Shown here in pieces: positions 32,351 to 42,373 of a DNA stretch of 64,000 nt. Numbering within the stretch: the stretch's first letter is position 1; every line of letters begins with the position of its first letter. The position numbers and the translations under genes were made by a program. The DNA is from Guillardia theta CCMP2712 (Eukaryota; Protista; Cryptophyta). The stretch lies in assembly GCF_000315625.1 (NCBI RefSeq), contig NW_005434666.1:946333-1010332 (forward strand), given 5' to 3'. The notes under the pieces were generated by a model. The model was not told the DNA's origin. It searched no databases and worked only from the letters and a program-made list of their open reading frames with translations.

Positions 32351-35300
32351 TTACGAGTCGCCACTGCCTCCTTGCCCTGCTCCTCCTTCCCCTCCTCCCG
32401 CCGCCGCCGCCGCCGCCGCTGCAAGCTCCTCCTCGATCGAGATCAGCTGCGTTACCCCGTCGATCATCTTCTGCACGAGCTCCACCTCCGAGTACCCGAT
32501 CCTCTGCTTGTTCGAGATGTCCCACTTGGCTCCCACTGCCGCGCTGTGCTCCCCAGACGACCCGCGAGGCTGCAGGTCGTACTTGCGGCAGATCTCCTCA
32601 AGCCTCTTCGGGTCCTTGTTCAGCTCTGGTAGCACGATCATCACGCTCGCTCGCAGCCCCGTCCCGAGGTTCGACGGGCACGTCCCAAGGAAGCCCAGAC
32701 GCTCGTCGTACATCAGTGCCTGCCCCTTTCCCTCCGCCGCCGTCTTGATCGCCTCCGACAGCTGGCAGAACCGCGAGAACACCCCTTTCACGTCCCCTCC
32801 TTCCTCCATCGCGATGATCCTGCACTGGTCCTCCTCGTTGCACCAGCATAGTACCGTCTTCGCGTCGTTGTGGAAGATGCCTCGTCCTTCCGGCCAGTCC
32901 CGCCCTGCCCCTGCTGCTCCTAGTAGCTGCATCGGCCCTGGCTTCTGGAACAAGAAGCCTCCTGCCTGCAGGTCCTGCTCCTGCTCTGCCGACAGCGACC
33001 CAAGCGGGTAGTACGTGCCTTGCAGCGCCTCTGGCAGCGCCCCGAACGCCTCCTTCAGTACATCCTCGACCGCCAGACGGTCCTCTTTGCTGGACCCCGC
33101 CGGCAGTGAGTACCCGGAGATGTTCCGCGCTGCTCGCACTCGCGTCGACTTGACGTACTGGCTAAACTTCCCCTGCTGCTCCTCCGTGAACACAAGCTTC
33201 GTCGCATCCAGATCCGATCGGTGCTCCTGCATCTCCGGGTCGAAGCCATGCCAGCCCTTCACGATCGGGTAGATGATCTCCTTGAAAGCCTCGAAGCACT
33301 CCTGGTCTCCGCACGTGAAGCCTACTCCAAGGTGAGGCCGCAGCACCCCCGCCTGCATGCCGTTGGACAGCGAGTAGCCCTTGGAGGTCTTGACGCCCTT
33401 GAGCTTCTCGAACAGCTCGCTCGTCATGTGCTTCCGCATCAGCACCTGATGCTTCTCCGTGAACGGCGGCAGCTCAGTGAACGTGATGTACTTGAAGTCC
33501 TCCGTGTCCTTGGCGTCCGGCGACGAGGCGGCAAGCTGATCGGCGAGCCATCGGTCGAAGGCGGCATCGATCTCCGGCAGCTTGAAGCCGTCCTTGGACG
33601 ACCCATGGCTCTCGCCTGCTGTCGGTTCCGATCCTCCCCCTCCTCCTGCCTCTCCCTCGCCCTGAGCTTCTGAAAAGGATCCCTGCTGCACCGGCATCCA
33701 CGTCACTACAGACGGCTTAGACATAAAGTCTCCTTGCACTTCGCCCGCATGCCCCTGGTCTGCCCCTCCCGACCCTACGGGCCCCTCGCCCGATGCGGCC
33801 TCAGAGGCTTGCTCTCCTGCTCCCGACCCTCCTCCCGCCGCCGCCGCCGCCGCCGCCGCTGCAAGCTCCTCCTCGATCGAGATCAGCTGCGTTACCCCGT
33901 CGATCATCTTCTGCACGAGCTCCACCTCCGAGTACCCGATCCTCTGCTTGTTCGAGATGTCCCACTTGGCTCCCACTGCCGCGCTGTGCTCCCCAGACGA
34001 CCCGCGAGGCTGCAGGTCGTACTTGCGGCAGATCTCCTCAAGCCTCTTCGGGTCCTTGTTCAGCTCTGGTAGCACGATCATCACGCTCGCTCGCAGCCCC
34101 GTCCCGAGGTTCGACGGGCACGTCCCAAGGAAGCCCAGACGCTCGTCGTACATCAGTGCCTGCCCCTTCCCCTCCGCCGCCGTCTTGATCGCCTCCGACA
34201 GCTGGCAGAACCGCGAGAACACCCCCTTCACGTCCCCTCCTTCCTCCATCGCGATGATCCTGCACTGGTCCTCCTCGTTGCACCAGCATAGTACCGTCTT
34301 CGCGTCGTTGTGGAAGATGCCTCGTCCTTCCGGCCAGTCCCGCCCTGCCCCTGCTGCTCCTAGTAGCTGCATCGGCCCTGGCTTCTGGAACAAGAAGCCT
34401 CCTGCCTGCAGGTCCTGCTCCTGCTCTGCCGACAGCGACCCAAGCGGGTAGTACGTGCCTTGCAGCGCCTCTGGCAGCGCCCCGAACGCCTCCTTCAGTA
34501 CATCCTCGACCGCCAGACGGTCCTCTTTGCTGGACCCCGCCGGCAGTGAGTACCCGGAGATGTTCCGCGCTGCTCGCACTCGCGTCGACTTGACGTACTG
34601 GCTAAACTTCCCCTGCTGCTCCTCCGTGAACACAAGCTTCGTCGCATCCAGATCCGATCGGTGCTCCTGCATCTCCGGGTCGAAGCCATGCCAGCCCTTC
34701 ACGATCGGGTAGATGATCTCCTTGAAAGCCTCGAAGCACTCCTGGTCTCCGCACGTGAAGCCTACCCCAAGGTGAGGCCGCAGCACCCCCGCCTGCATGC
34801 CGTTGGACAGCGAGTAGCCCTTGGAGGTCTTGACGCCCTTGAGCTTCTCGAACAGCTCGCTCGTCATGTGCTTCCGCATCAGCGACTGATGCTTCTCCGT
34901 GAACGGCGGCAGCTCAGTGAACGTGATGTACTTGAAGTCCTCCGTGTCCTTGGCGTCCGGCGACGAGGCGGCCAGCTGATCGGCGAGCCATCGGTCGAAG
35001 GCGGCATCGATCTCCGGCAGCTTGAATGAGCTTGTTGACTGCTTGTTGTTGGAACTTTGCCTACCATTGTTTCCTTTCTCTTCTGACGGTACAATCTGTA
35101 CAAGATTGTAAGTATGCCGTTGAAGTTGAACAAGAATTATGGTTTTATATTACCTTGTGCTGACGTTCAAGACTCTCCTTGAGTTCTGCATTCTCTTTTT
35201 CAAGGATCTTGATTCTCTCTAGCAAATTTCCCTTTTGGGAGAAAGTGAGTCACATCCTTCTATCCTCACGATCCTCACCTTCTCAGTTTCGTTGTGCGGT

Positions 35301-35946
35301 GCTTGGCTGTTTGCATCAGATTCGTTGTTGCTGTCATTGTTGGCTTGAACCACAACATCATGCAGCAACGCCGACGCCTCCTGCCCAGACTCCTTGAGAG
35401 GCTCCAACATAGAACGAGCGATGTCAAAGTTCACCTTCTCCCATGCAGAGAACAGAATGTTGTCTGCATCCTTCATGGTAGCACGGCGTATGAAATGAAC
35501 GCGACCAGCATGCGCTCTCCCGACGCACTCCACGTGCATCCTCAGGTAACATGTCTTCTCACCCTTAAGGTCCTCCTTGTTGTCCTCCTCCTTCTGTTCG
35601 AATCCGAAGAAGTTGCCAAGTTTGTGATACAGGTACCTGGGGAAACTCAGTCCGCCGATCCTACCTCTCACGACCTACTTCTTGGGATCGGAAGGTTGGT
35701 TGATGGCCAGATCTGACGTCAAATCCTGCAAGATCTCTTTGACCTTGTGCTCCTGCATTGAACCGTTTCAGGAGCTACGAGGACGAGCAAGCCTGCAGAA
35801 GGTCGCACCTCGAAGAAACTTTGAACAGCAGCGCGTGAGGTCGCGCTCTTCTTCTTGATGGGAGTCAACCTGTCGAGTCTGCATCACAAACACGAGATGC
35901 ATGAATGTATTTCCGACCTCCCAGGTTTCGACTTGGGTGATTCCAT
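32351..35946 (-). CDS. Phosphagen kinase (ATP:guanido phosphotransferase), two catalytic domains, N-terminal D/D (RIIa/Dpy-30-like) docking domain and short coiled coil
   Basis: Each domain has STRVRAARN, WPEGRGIFHN, WCNEED, GFLGTCPSNLGTGLRASV, RGSSGEHS, DISNKQRIG. Five upstream exons splice in frame from ATG 35946 and include FFEEHKVKEILQDLTSDLAINQPSDPKKYLYHKL. Confidence 0.92.
32394..35026. repeat. Tandem direct duplication, ~1190-bp units at 1440-bp period (32394-33586 vs ~33834-35026)
   Basis: Line-by-line identity, about six mismatches seen. Confidence 0.97.
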
Positions 35947-39673: not shown

Positions 39674-42373
39674 ATGCAACATAAATCAAGGCACAAGTCG
39701 GACAAGAGAAATGTAAGCCCGACGGGTCCAGACAAACTAGATGTAGATCCTCATGATTGGAGTTTGAAGAAGACTTTTTGGATGTTCATCATCTCACAAG
39801 CTGTTTTGTTGTATGTCTTCTCGCACATCATATGCCAAAGTGATCCAGAAGAGCACAAGAGATTGCTCATGGAGATCAAGCAGCAGTTCATCAACAAGCA
39901 GAGCTCCATTTCATCTCTTGATCCCAAGGCAGTATCATTGTCAGTTGGAAAATCCGCTACGAGCACAAGGATGGAGGCTGCCAAACCTATCGTAAGCAAT
40001 GTTCGACTTGATCCGATCATGCCCAACTCTCAGGCAAAGAATGAAGTTGTTCGATCCAACGAAAGTCCGGCGATACCACGTGTGGACGTCAGTACGAACA
40101 AGCCCGACGGAAAGTCAAGTCCTCTTGTCAACGCACCTCTTGTTAACGCACCACTCGCGAGCAAGGCTGAGCAGCCAGCTCTCGCTGCAGCTCCGAAGGT
40201 GCAGCTGGAACCAAGTCTGCAAGTCGCACCAGCGTCGGGGGGCGTGCGGGCACCTGATGAGCGAGCAAAGTCGGGACAGGGCGTGTTTCGTCTGATGGTC
40301 CTCACATGCAATAGACCGGAGGCTCTCAAACGCCTGCTGGCCTCGCTCAAGGGCGCGGACTATATGGGGCGTACAGCCAACCTCCACGTGTTCCAGGACC
40401 TCCTCGTGAGTGGGACGGCAGACGCGGACACTAAGAAGATCCTGCAGGACTTCCAGTGGCCGTTTGGATCTAAGAATATTGATGTAGCGAGAACCCGACA
40501 AGGCCTTCTCCTGTCCTTTGTGAATGCGTGGAAGCCGTCTGGGCCGGCCGATGACAACGATGTCGCAATTTTCTTTGAGGACGATATTCAGGTGTCTCCT
40601 TTTTTTGCCAAGTGGTACCTTGAAGCGCATGAGAGATTCCGGTACGATGCGTCTGTTTGTGTCTTCTCGGCCATGCGAGCACAACTGCGAGCCAGCGATC
40701 CCCATGGAGAAGGAGAACTCGGAAATTCCTTACCTGGCGATGTCAACGTTTTCAAGTACAGACTCGTAGGGACGACATCTCTATCCCCTCTGGCAAGTCA
40801 GTGGATCGAGTTCAGAACTTGGTTTGAACAGGCCTCCAAAAATCCCAACTTCTCCCCTGTTGTCGAGGGGATTCAGCCCACAATCTGGTACTTGGACTTG
40901 AAGAATACCGGGAATGAAGACAAGATGTGGGTCATGTGGTACATTAAATTCATGTCAGATCGCAACTACTACTGCGTGTATCCTTGGATACCCAGCAGAC
41001 ATGCTCTCGTGGCAAAGTGGAACGATGCAGATGCAAGAGCGGGGAACCAGCTGTTTGCCGACAACAGGCTTGTTGATTCTTGGGATCGAAACTTGGTCGT
41101 CTGGCCTTCTTACGTCCCAACACTTGACTGGAACGGTCATGACAAGATGCTGCAGCCGCAAGTGTTGAGGCAGAGGCTGTCCTGCGATGGCAAGACATCC
41201 ACTCTCAACCTCCCGAAGTTGCAGGCGGCCATGCAGGGCATGCCCAAGGATGTCGTCATTCTGCATTTCATCAACAGTGCATTCATGCCATTCATGCTGT
41301 CCTGGCTCTGCAACACGCAGCAGATGACAGGAGTGCATGAAAGGACCCTCGTGATAACAACTGACGCTGGGAGCGAAGAGAGAGTCAAAAGATTCTCGAG
41401 CAGAGTTCATGCCATGTACCTGGAAGGATACAACGGCATCAATGGCAACTTGGATTTTGATTCTTTGGGTTATCGCAGGATGCTGAAAGCTAGAATCGAG
41501 ATCATCATCTCCGTGCTACAGAAATCCGATCTCTTGTTTCTCACCGAGCCAGACGCCATCTGGATGAACAATCTTTTGGAGATCAAGGAATTCGTTAACT
41601 CGCCGAGTGATCTGATAGGATTCGACGATGAACAGGGGGGGAAGGGAGCAGGGTTTGTGCTCATGCGTAACAATGCGGCAATCAGCTGCCTGTGGAGGAA
41701 GCTGCTGGAGAGACAAGAGTTAACGTTGGCGCCCTACGAGGGTCAGCCCAACGAGATTGTAACGTATGACGACAACGACCAGAAGTACTTCAACGCCCTC
41801 ATCCAAGACATGGAGGCCGCGGGCATGATGAAATCATCTACCATGGACACGTGCAAGTTCCGAACGGGGAAGTGGTACAAGAGGGAGGAGTGGAAAGACT
41901 ACATGACGTGCCTAAACATCGTCCCTGATATCCTCAACTTCAACTGGATGGTCGGCAACCAGCCAAAGATCCAGCGAGCGAAGCTGTACGGCCACTGGTT
42001 CCTAGAGGAGGACGGGCAGACTTGCAAGCCCATCCAAGAAACTCTAGCGCGAGCAAAAACTTCCTTCACTGGCGGTTTTTCAGCGGGGCAGGTGGCCTTA
42101 CCCTCGCCCCAGATTCCTTTTTCCCAGCCCGCGATACCGGGAAACAATTTCGCTCCCTCGCAGTTCAATTTTGCCGGGCAAGGGAACCCGTCCAACTCCT
42201 TGGGGCTGGGCTATCAGCCCATGGTCAACTCACAGCAGGTACAGCAGGGAGGGCAGTCGAACAACCCGTACGGAAGGTTCCGGATCAACCCGGCGGTCCA
42301 CCAGAGGATCAACAGCCTTCTAGCCGAACGATTCCGCCGTGTGGGATCTGTACGGCATTCGACGAAGCGATAG
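39674..42373 (+). CDS. Type II membrane glycosyltransferase with two catalytic domains (GT-A/GT2-like + GT77 nucleotide-diphospho-sugar transferase)
   Basis: N-terminal TM (FWMFIISQAVLLYVFSHII) and Pro/Ala stem. Domain 1: VLTCNRPEALKRLLASL..FFEDDIQVSP. Domain 2: FINSAFMPFMLSWLCN..TEPDAIW..GFVLMR..NDQKYFN..NWMVGNQPKIQRAK..HWFL. Intronless 899 aa. Confidence 0.85.
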   Translation: MQHKSRHKSDKRNVSPTGPDKLDVDPHDWSLKKTFWMFIISQAVLLYVFSHIICQSDPEEHKRLLMEIKQQFINKQSSISSLDPKAVSLSVGKSATSTRMEAAKPIVSNVRLDPIMPNSQAKNEVVRSNESPAIPRVDVSTNKPDGKSSPLVNAPLVNAPLASKAEQPALAAAPKVQLEPSLQVAPASGGVRAPDERAKSGQGVFRLMVLTCNRPEALKRLLASLKGADYMGRTANLHVFQDLLVSGTADADTKKILQDFQWPFGSKNIDVARTRQGLLLSFVNAWKPSGPADDNDVAIFFEDDIQVSPFFAKWYLEAHERFRYDASVCVFSAMRAQLRASDPHGEGELGNSLPGDVNVFKYRLVGTTSLSPLASQWIEFRTWFEQASKNPNFSPVVEGIQPTIWYLDLKNTGNEDKMWVMWYIKFMSDRNYYCVYPWIPSRHALVAKWNDADARAGNQLFADNRLVDSWDRNLVVWPSYVPTLDWNGHDKMLQPQVLRQRLSCDGKTSTLNLPKLQAAMQGMPKDVVILHFINSAFMPFMLSWLCNTQQMTGVHERTLVITTDAGSEERVKRFSSRVHAMYLEGYNGINGNLDFDSLGYRRMLKARIEIIISVLQKSDLLFLTEPDAIWMNNLLEIKEFVNSPSDLIGFDDEQGGKGAGFVLMRNNAAISCLWRKLLERQELTLAPYEGQPNEIVTYDDNDQKYFNALIQDMEAAGMMKSSTMDTCKFRTGKWYKREEWKDYMTCLNIVPDILNFNWMVGNQPKIQRAKLYGHWFLEEDGQTCKPIQETLARAKTSFTGGFSAGQVALPSPQIPFSQPAIPGNNFAPSQFNFAGQGNPSNSLGLGYQPMVNSQQVQQGGQSNNPYGRFRINPAVHQRINSLLAERFRRVGSVRHSTKR

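What the first reader, a model, noticed from the sequence alone, without database searches (positions are those of the whole stretch)
35030..35946. Phosphagen kinase carrying an N-terminal D/D (RIIa/Dpy-30-like) docking domain
Seen: five small exons absent from the 842-aa ORF splice in frame to the kinase. They encode FFEEHKVKEILQDLTSDLAINQPSDPKKYLYHKL and a coiled coil LLERIKILEKENAELKESLERQ. Established: the Y/F-L/F..H.I..LL..L...L....P.DP..F/YL...L pattern is the AKAP-binding D/D fold, used by axonemal adenylate kinases and radial-spoke proteins; multi-domain phosphagen kinases buffer ATP in flagella. Inference: an AKAP-anchored phosphagen shuttle on the axoneme, a combination I do not recognise from known phosphagen kinases.
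Basis: partly seen in the sequence, partly recalled or inferred. Interest (0 to 1): 0.72.

Follow-up and report, generated by a model that had tools for sequence, protein, structure and literature searches.

The report
Docking-domain phosphagen kinase, split by annotation
In the alga Guillardia theta, two annotated genes are really one gene that puts a small dimerisation/docking domain, of the type that tethers enzymes to flagellar scaffolds, in front of a double energy-buffering (phosphagen) kinase; this architecture has not been described for these kinases.

Summary
On the minus strand, five GT-AG exons (35946-35154) join in frame to the exon that holds the 842-aa kinase ORF. The result is one stop-free CDS of 1114 codons.

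The reference Guillardia theta annotation splits this into GUITHDRAFT_133733 (exons 1-4) and GUITHDRAFT_92286 (kinase from an internal Met). A related metagenome contig (L022) carries docking helix II, a small conserved middle domain, the coiled coil and the kinase start in one uninterrupted ORF. The fusion therefore does not rest on a splice guess.

The N-terminus is a divergent RIIa/Dpy-30-clan docking domain:
- Pfam RIIa is below threshold (15-20 bits against a cut-off of 22.4).
- The best single-stretch PDB sequence match is the radial-spoke protein FAP385 (E 0.002).
- The nearest Atlas structure models are mostly docking-domain families or proteins.
- The exon is under purifying selection (pN 0.19, pS 0.65).

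Both kinase domains keep the conserved catalytic motifs.

A second G. theta gene has Dpy-30 + coiled coil + a degenerate kinase, and a Hanusia transcript confirms that as one ORF. The scan had already noted this second gene on other DNA.

Anchoring to the axoneme is inference only. No RNA reads could be laid. I found no paper describing this architecture. I rate it a new variant of a known kind.

The parts
35918..35946 (-). Exon 1, start codon at 35946-35944; start of a basic N-terminal tail
   Evidence: First ATG after an in-frame stop. GT donor at 35917. The E1|E2 junction is the same in reference model P0125 and in Hanusia transcript P0122.
35809..35869 (-). Exon 2, basic tail and the short helix before the docking domain
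   Evidence: GT-AG borders. No substitutions against close relatives L020/L021. The tail motif is conserved in L019/L022 exon A.
35679..35752 (-). Exon 3, docking-domain helix I and the Q-P-x-D-P turn
   Evidence: Pfam RIIa 19.8 bits, E 6e-4, profile positions 3-22. hhalign to G. theta RIIa domains E 2.9e-4. pN 0.19 against pS 0.65 versus L019. The phase-2 donor is conserved in L019 and L022.
35279..35636 (-). Exon 4: docking helix II, acidic linker, conserved beta-hairpin middle domain, low-complexity stretch
   Evidence: Four related clusters, and no others, among 1.84 billion representatives. Aligns to the L022 ORF at E 7e-28. AF2 gives helix 53-66, strands 83-93 and 98-108, and helix 109-120, at low confidence.
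35381..35434 (-). Probable extra intron inside exon 4 (54 nt, GT..AG, in frame, no stop)
   Evidence: Its 18 residues are absent from L019 and P0124. Hanusia P0122 diverges there and then ends. Coordinates. Against: the two substitutions versus L020/L021 would both be synonymous.
35154..35231 (-). Exon 5, 26-residue coiled coil
   Evidence: AG acceptor and GT donor are kept in L020/L021. In L019 and L022 the coiled coil lies in the same exon as the middle domain. Only weak coiled-coil family hits.
32351..35095 (-). Exon 6: linker, then two tandem phosphagen kinase domains, stop at 32353-32351
   Evidence: PF00217 424.5 bits and PF02807 130.2 bits, two stretches each. There is no Met between the acceptor and the conserved kinase N-extension.
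33866..34897 (-). Kinase domain 1 (Pfam span)
   Evidence: Residues 67-410 of the 914-aa translation. The conserved catalytic motifs are intact.
32426..33457 (-). Kinase domain 2, a near-identical tandem copy (period 1440 nt)
   Evidence: About 1.2 kb nearly identical to domain 1, with 5 internal mismatches. The conserved catalytic motifs are intact.

Best explanation
This is one Guillardia theta gene, wrongly split into GUITHDRAFT_133733 and GUITHDRAFT_92286. It encodes a protein of about 1100 residues with these parts in order:
- a basic N-terminal tail;
- a divergent RIIa/Dpy-30-clan dimerisation/docking (D/D) domain, closest to the radial-spoke protein FAP385;
- a small conserved beta-hairpin domain restricted to this lineage;
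- a coiled coil;
- two near-identical, catalytically intact phosphagen (guanidino) kinase domains.

Shown here: the gene structure, the collinear single ORF in a relative, purifying selection on the docking exon, and the intact catalytic motifs.

Inferred: the D/D domain and the coiled coil make a homodimer with four kinase domains. The D/D groove would clamp an amphipathic helix of an anchoring protein, most likely in the flagellar axoneme (RSP3-type radial-spoke or similar scaffolds). ATP would then be regenerated from a phosphagen next to the dynein ATPases.

My estimates for the separate steps: single gene about 0.9, D/D fold about 0.8, axonemal docking about 0.5.
For: Single gene:
- All five introns are GT-AG and short (42-58 nt), and the joined CDS has one terminal stop.
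- The kinase N-extension is conserved in cryptophyte kinases and in two G. theta paralogues. In E6 it has no Met upstream, so an upstream exon is needed.
- In metagenome contig L022, one 203-codon stop-free ORF matches P0125 residues 56-122 (E 7e-28) and the window's kinase start (E 2e-27). The D/D exon and the Met exon lie upstream, and the intron sits at the same phase-2 position.
- L016/L019 show the same order of parts.

D/D domain:
- RIIa 19.8 bits on E3 and 20.6 bits on the L022 exon.
- phmmer against PDB sequences: FAP385 E 0.002, EFCAB10 E 0.088, PKA RI-beta D/D E 0.46.
- The nearest Atlas structure models for residues 20-68 are mostly D/D families or proteins (RIIa, C8orf34/DUF5586, EFCAB10, TPGS1), plus ciliate enolase and adenylate kinase clusters.
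- hhalign to G. theta RIIa domains E 2.9e-4.
- pN 0.19 against pS 0.65.

Precedent in the same clade:
- Locus C26 has Dpy-30 (23.6 bits, above the cut-off) + coiled coil + a kinase. The Hanusia phi transcript P0131 has all of this in one ORF.
- The two N-termini align at E 4e-5.
- P0058 joins AK, two ADK domains and Dpy-30 (49 bits).

Possible anchors: RSP3 genes are present in the genome. Adenylate kinases of Tetrahymena are assigned to radial spokes, and FAP385 resembles the Ak8A N-terminus (PMC12399478).
Against: - The E5|E6 junction in G. theta itself is therefore not shown by transcripts.
- The reference annotation keeps two genes.
- Pfam RIIa is below its gathering score even on the spliced model P0125 (15.1 bits), and it aligns only helix I.
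- My AF2 model is of low confidence (pLDDT 50) and Foldseek found nothing.
- The assembled Hanusia transcript P0122 joins E2 to E3 out of the D/D frame and appears to retain intron 3.
- GC3 differs between the parts: 0.62 in the upstream exons and 0.81 in the kinase exon.
- An unchecked earlier scan note (s1-437014) says cryptophytes also fuse D/D domains to glycyl-tRNA synthetase. A D/D domain therefore does not by itself imply a flagellar location.
Confidence: 0.65

Rival explanations
1. It is one gene, and the D/D domain is real, but it docks the kinase to a non-axonemal scaffold or serves only for dimerisation. The enzyme would then buffer ATP at some other cell site.
For: An unchecked earlier scan note (s1-437014) says cryptophytes and haptophytes attach D/D domains to a glycyl-tRNA synthetase. 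A tRNA-synthetase cluster, commonest in haptophytes, also appears among the structure neighbours. No localisation data were obtained. The conserved middle domain has no known partner.
Against: The best single-stretch PDB match is a radial-spoke protein, FAP385. The kinases that share D/D tethering (AK7, AK8, NDK) are axonemal (PMC12399478). Phosphagen kinases in several flagellates are targeted to flagella (PMC4517888).
Confidence: 0.25
2. There are two separate genes, as annotated: a small FAP385/RSP11-like D/D protein (E1-E4 or E1-E5) and an independent kinase gene that starts at the Met at 34879.
For: The reference models are split. If intron 5 is retained, a stop follows two codons after E5. 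In L016 the kinase frame holds Met codons upstream of the kinase start. GC3 and intron density change sharply at E6.
Against: The ORF in L022 is continuous from docking helix II into the kinase. A start at 34879 would remove the conserved N-extension and six residues of the Pfam N-domain. The 3' end of model 133733 reads into intron 4, and that stretch changes non-synonymously in close relatives. In the relatives the coiled coil is in the same exon as the middle domain.
Confidence: 0.07
3. It is one gene, but the N-terminal helices are not a true D/D domain. They would be a generic helical extension of the coiled coil.
For: Pfam is below threshold and aligns only helix I. hhalign gives a probability of 40%. 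AF2 pLDDT is 58-66 in that region. In the genome-wide scan the RIIa match has E 0.8.
Against: Three solved D/D proteins are among the six PDB hits. Most of the nearest Atlas structure models are D/D families or proteins. The Q-P-x-D-P turn and the helix II pattern are conserved in the relatives. The N-terminus is similar to the paralogue's Dpy-30 domain, which scores above its threshold.
Confidence: 0.1

Closest known systems
D/D-tethered axonemal nucleotide kinases (adenylate kinases AK7 and AK8, NDK/RSP23; FAP385 of the Chlamydomonas radial-spoke neck)
   Same: A small RIIa/Dpy-30-clan docking domain is fused to an enzyme that balances nucleotide phosphates. The best single-stretch PDB sequence match of the window's N-terminus is FAP385, which PMC12399478 reports as similar to the Tetrahymena Ak8A N-terminus.
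   Different: The catalytic part here is a two-domain phosphagen (guanidino) kinase, not an adenylate or nucleoside-diphosphate kinase. A conserved middle domain and a coiled coil are added. The location has not been tested.
Flagellar phosphagen kinases targeted by lipidation (Trypanosoma brucei AK3; multi-domain flagellar creatine kinases of marine invertebrates)
   Same: These are phosphagen kinase isoforms with an added N-terminal targeting module, and they are often multi-domain.
   Different: Those enzymes use N-terminal acylation and the membrane. The window protein starts M-E-S-P, with no Gly at position 2, and carries a docking domain instead. The lipidation pattern fits the G. theta paralogue on contig C144, which starts M-G-C-G.
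G. theta locus C26 / Hanusia phi transcript P0131: Dpy-30 + coiled coil + divergent phosphagen kinase
   Same: The order of parts is the same (D/D domain, coiled coil, kinase). The N-termini align at E 4e-5.
   Different: It has a single kinase domain in which conserved catalytic motifs are changed (NEED to NGED with R to K, GLRASV to GFTCQV, the GEH motif lost), so it is probably a pseudo-kinase. It lacks the middle domain, and its D/D domain is of the Dpy-30 type.
P0058, a metagenomic AK - ADK - ADK - Dpy-30 chain (40 member sequences)
   Same: It is a cryptophyte-like phosphagen kinase (77% identity) in one chain with a D/D domain.
   Different: Its D/D domain is C-terminal and of the canonical Dpy-30 type (49 bits), and it sits after two adenylate kinase domains. 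It has one phosphagen kinase domain.

Membership tests
Phosphagen (ATP:guanidino) kinase | N-terminal helical domain (PF02807) plus C-terminal catalytic domain (PF00217), above the curated cut-offs | tested here: met
   PF00217 424.5 bits and PF02807 130.2 bits, two stretches each.
Phosphagen (ATP:guanidino) kinase | Conserved catalytic motifs (NEED..R, CPSN..G..R, R-G-x-x-G-E-H) | tested here: met
   Both window domains keep the motifs shared with other cryptophyte kinases. The C26 paralogue does not. The roles of the residues are from my general knowledge of the family.
Phosphagen (ATP:guanidino) kinase | Identity of the guanidino substrate | not testable with these tools
   Sources name the homologues variously as arginine or creatine kinase. 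An enzyme assay is needed.
RIIa/Dpy-30 clan dimerisation-docking domain | A Pfam RIIa or Dpy-30 score above the gathering cut-off | tested here: not met
   RIIa 19.8 bits on E3 alone and 15.1 bits on the spliced P0125, against a cut-off of 22.4. Only profile positions 3-22 of 38 align. There is no Dpy-30 hit.
RIIa/Dpy-30 clan dimerisation-docking domain | Significant sequence similarity to solved D/D domains | tested here: met
   FAP385 (7jtk_u) E 0.002, with EFCAB10 at E 0.088 and PKA RI-beta D/D at E 0.46 following. hhalign to genomic RIIa domains E 2.9e-4.
RIIa/Dpy-30 clan dimerisation-docking domain | A helix-turn-helix of about 40 residues with the fold of known D/D domains | tested here: inconclusive
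   AF2 places helices at 22-31, 34-48 and 53-66, but pLDDT is about 60. The Atlas model gives TM 0.54-0.61, mostly to D/D families or proteins. Foldseek on my model found nothing.
RIIa/Dpy-30 clan dimerisation-docking domain | Homodimerisation and binding of an amphipathic anchoring helix | not testable with these tools
   This needs a multimer model or a pull-down.
Lipid-anchored flagellar phosphagen kinases | An N-terminal acylation motif (Met-Gly...) | tested here: not met
   The window protein starts M-E-S-P. The C144 paralogue starts M-G-C-G.
Axonemal (radial-spoke associated) enzymes | Presence in the flagellum or axoneme | not testable with these tools
   There are no proteome or localisation data. 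The only related check is that RSP3 genes exist in the genome.

The most novel reading that the evidence does not exclude
Cryptophytes wire a phosphagen system directly into the axoneme. An active four-site kinase dimer (this gene) and a Dpy-30-bearing pseudo-kinase paralogue would dock by D/D domains onto radial-spoke or central-apparatus amphipathic helices. A lipidated paralogue would serve the flagellar membrane and a plain one the cytosol. This would be the first case of AKAP-type anchoring of a phosphagen kinase.
Probability: 0.4. Interest if true: 0.7.

Novelty: new variant of a known kind. Interest (0 to 1): 0.55.

Why it matters
In the papers found here, flagellar phosphagen kinases reach the flagellum by lipid anchors or targeting peptides. 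Docking by D/D domains was described there only for adenylate and nucleoside-diphosphate kinases.

A D/D-tethered phosphagen kinase would show that the AKAP-like docking system of the axoneme also positions the phosphagen shuttle. It would also give a simple handle for experiments: delete about 70 residues and test whether ATP regeneration at a fixed site matters for flagellar beating.

Practically, the finding corrects reference gene models in G. theta. Two models should be merged. The models of the C26 and C144 paralogues are also truncated at the N-terminus. The finding also shows that this alga has four differently addressed phosphagen kinase isoforms.

Tried and rejected
- The look-up of encoding contigs had no record for P0001 or P0122. 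The contig of P0124 had no DNA.
- Only its length, stop count and GC3 were computed. Searches used single exons by reference and the database model P0125, which already joins E1-E4.
- A word search with P0125 found only the cluster that holds it (P0121) and Hanusia P0122. No full-length transcript-derived protein is in the collection.
- AF2 with a six-row alignment gave pLDDT 50. Foldseek against the PDB gave no match with E <= 0.001.
- The Atlas search for the middle domain gave Enolase_N at 0.76, which is noise level, and I rejected it.
- MAFFT placed short exon fragments in the wrong register in A1-A3. I used A4 instead.
- Substitution counts against the close relatives L020/L021 were too few to be informative.
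- The radial-spoke structure paper PMC7855293 is not held.
- There is no paralogue of exon 4 elsewhere in the genome.
Full report
**What is in the sequence.** The window comes from Guillardia theta CCMP2712: the 842-aa ORF is 99% identical to GUITHDRAFT_92286. The kinase lies on the minus strand. Reading upstream on that strand gives six exons with GT-AG borders:

| Exon | Coordinates | Content |
|---|---|---|
| E1 | 35946-35918 | start codon, basic tail |
| E2 | 35869-35809 | basic tail |
| E3 | 35752-35679 | docking helix I |
| E4 | 35636-35279 | docking helix II, middle domain |
| E5 | 35231-35154 | coiled coil |
| E6 | 35095-32351 | linker and both kinase domains |

The introns are 48, 56, 42, 47 and 58 nt. 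The joined exons make 3345 nt with a single terminal stop. I computed only statistics on the join. The first spans E2/E3/E4 and the second is E5.

**The reference annotation splits the gene.** A cluster look-up showed that E1-E4 are annotated as a separate 193-aa protein, GUITHDRAFT_133733 (P0125). It uses exactly these junctions and then reads on into intron 4 to a stop. The kinase model (P0001, 752 aa) starts at an internal Met at 34879.

That start is not credible. Every cryptophyte relative and two G. theta paralogues carry a conserved extension of about 50 residues before it. The Pfam N-domain already begins six residues upstream of that Met. In E6 there is no Met between the acceptor and this extension.

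**Evidence that it is one polypeptide.** The middle part of E4 has only four related clusters among 1.84 billion representatives. Their contigs were informative.
- Tara contigs L016 and L019 show the same order on one strand: a Met exon, then the docking exon, then helix II with the middle domain and coiled coil, then the kinase start. The intron inside the docking domain sits at the same phase-2 position.
- JGI contig L022 is decisive. From helix II onward, one stop-free ORF of 203 codons runs to the contig end. Its front aligns to P0125 residues 56-122 (E 7e-28) and its end aligns to the window's kinase start (E 2e-27).

In that relative, therefore, no splice has to be assumed between the docking region and the kinase. 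Close relatives L020 and L021 keep all splice sites and frames, but they are too similar to say more.

**Is the N-terminus a D/D domain?** The evidence is mixed but points one way.
- Pfam RIIa matches E3 at 19.8 bits (E 6e-4) and the L022 exon at 20.6 bits.
- On the spliced P0125 the score is only 15.1 bits, it covers only helix I, and it is below the 22.4-bit cut-off.
- In a six-frame scan of the whole genome the hit has E 0.8.
- phmmer of residues 20-75 against PDB sequences gives the radial-spoke neck protein FAP385 at E 0.002, then EFCAB10 (E 0.088) and the PKA RI-beta D/D domain (E 0.46). The nominal top hit, a lectin, is a repeat artefact made of many weak stretches.
- The nearest models to the ESM Atlas model of residues 20-68 are mostly D/D families or proteins: RIIa proteins, C8orf34/DUF5586, EFCAB10 and TPGS1. 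Ciliate enolase and adenylate kinase clusters also appear.
- hhalign to three bona fide G. theta RIIa domains gives E 2.9e-4 at 40% probability.
- The exon is under clear purifying selection in this frame: pN 0.19 against pS 0.65 versus L019.
- My own AF2 model has helices at 22-31, 34-48 and 53-66, but pLDDT is only 50, and Foldseek found nothing.

I conclude that this is a divergent member of the RIIa/Dpy-30 clan, with probability about 0.8.

**The other parts of the protein.**
- Between the docking domain and the coiled coil lies a conserved segment of about 45 residues, modelled as a beta-hairpin plus a helix. It has no Pfam family and no credible structural neighbour.
- A 54-nt in-frame GT..AG stretch (35434-35381) is absent from two relatives, and the Hanusia transcript leaves the frame there. 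It is probably a sixth intron.
- The two kinase domains are tandem copies with period 1440 nt. About 1.2 kb is nearly identical, with five internal mismatches.
- Both kinase domains keep the conserved catalytic motifs.

**A second case in the same clade.** Genome-wide family scans found a Dpy-30 match about 0.9 kb upstream of a divergent phosphagen kinase on contig C26, on the same strand. That match scores 23.6 bits, above its cut-off. The locus reads as a Met-initiated Dpy-30 exon, a coiled-coil exon and then the kinase.

A transcript-derived protein of the related cryptophyte Hanusia phi (P0131, 582 aa, 81% identical) holds all three parts in one ORF. That is transcript-level proof that the D/D + coiled coil + phosphagen kinase architecture exists in this clade. 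In that kinase the conserved catalytic motifs are changed, so it is probably a pseudo-kinase.

Its N-terminus aligns with the window's N-terminus at E 4e-5. The scan had already noted this locus on other DNA (s1-450911).

A metagenomic chain, P0058, also joins a cryptophyte-type kinase, two adenylate kinase domains and a C-terminal Dpy-30 domain.

**How it most likely works.**

Shown: one chain with a docking-type N-terminus, a coiled coil and two intact kinase domains.

Inferred: the D/D domain and the coiled coil make a dimer carrying four catalytic domains. The D/D groove binds an amphipathic helix of an anchoring protein. The most likely site is the axoneme, for four reasons:
- The best single-stretch PDB match is the radial-spoke protein FAP385.
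- Adenylate kinases of Tetrahymena are assigned to radial spokes, and FAP385 resembles the Ak8A N-terminus (PMC12399478).
- G. theta has RSP3 genes.
- Phosphagen kinases are targeted to flagella in other protists, there by lipidation (PMC4517888 and bioRxiv 10.1101/2020.05.07.083568).

G. theta appears to have four differently addressed isoforms:
- this docking-domain enzyme;
- a two-domain paralogue starting M-G-C-G, which looks like an acylation motif;
- a plain single-domain enzyme;
- the Dpy-30 pseudo-kinase.

A caution: an earlier scan note, not checked here, says cryptophytes also attach D/D domains to glycyl-tRNA synthetase (s1-437014). A D/D domain alone does not prove a flagellar address.

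**Novelty.** Full-text searches that combined phosphagen or arginine kinase with RIIa, Dpy-30 or docking terms found no description of such a fusion. Among the 120 best kinase relatives, only P0058 carries a D/D family in its precomputed Pfam list. That search was limited by protein length, and no tool here can query domain architectures, so absence elsewhere is not shown.

I rate this a new variant of a known kind: known docking logic with a new catalytic passenger. It also corrects a gene model.

**What remains open.**
- The assembled Hanusia fragment P0122 joins E1 to E2 as predicted. However, it enters E3 out of frame and appears to retain intron 3, which I cannot explain.
- The substrate, the dimer state, the binding partner and the location are all untested.

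Noticed in passing
L009:1438-1635 (-) and L015:1468-2616 (-) = G000 contig C26, about 370.7-372.3 kb: This is a second D/D-kinase gene: a Met-initiated Dpy-30 exon (23.6 bits), a coiled coil and a divergent phosphagen kinase with changed catalytic motifs. Reference model GUITHDRAFT_69639 (P0130) starts only at the kinase. Hanusia transcript P0131 carries all parts in one ORF.
   Followed up: yes
L013:721-3531 (+) = G000 contig C144: This paralogous two-domain kinase has a 936-aa ORF that starts M-G-C-G-T-S, a likely myristoylation/palmitoylation motif. Reference model P0010 (589 aa) starts in the middle of a domain and looks truncated.
   Followed up: partly
window 35381-35434 (-): An in-frame, stop-free 54-nt GT..AG stretch inside exon 4. 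Two relatives lack its 18 residues, and the Hanusia transcript leaves the frame there and ends. It is probably an unannotated intron, although its two substitutions against close relatives would both be synonymous.
   Followed up: partly
window about 33490-33760 (-), the linker between the two kinase domains: Reference model P0001 removes 90 codons here as an intron. This deletes the conserved N-extension of domain 2, which related two-domain proteins keep. That intron looks doubtful.
   Followed up: no
window 32387-33592 versus 33827-35032: The two kinase domains are near-identical at the DNA level (five internal mismatches in about 1.2 kb). The paralogue on C144 and the relative P0002 likewise have internally near-identical domains. 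This suggests concerted evolution or gene conversion within each gene.
   Followed up: partly
window 32351-35946 (-): Composition and structure change sharply at exon 6. Upstream there are five or six introns in 0.85 kb with GC3 0.62. The kinase exon is 2.7 kb without introns, with GC3 0.81.
   Followed up: no
P0122 (Hanusia phi transcript fragment): It joins E1 to E2 as predicted, but it continues into E3 in a shifted frame and appears to read through intron 3. It could be an immature transcript, an assembly error or an alternative splice form. This is unexplained.
   Followed up: partly
P0058 (ENA metagenome cluster, 40 members): One chain holds a cryptophyte-type phosphagen kinase, two adenylate kinase domains and a C-terminal Dpy-30 domain (49 bits).
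   Followed up: partly
window 39674-42373 (+): An 899-aa single-exon ORF with a nucleotide-diphospho-sugar transferase domain (PF03407, E 1.7e-11) in its C-terminal half. The N-terminal half has no family match.
   Followed up: no
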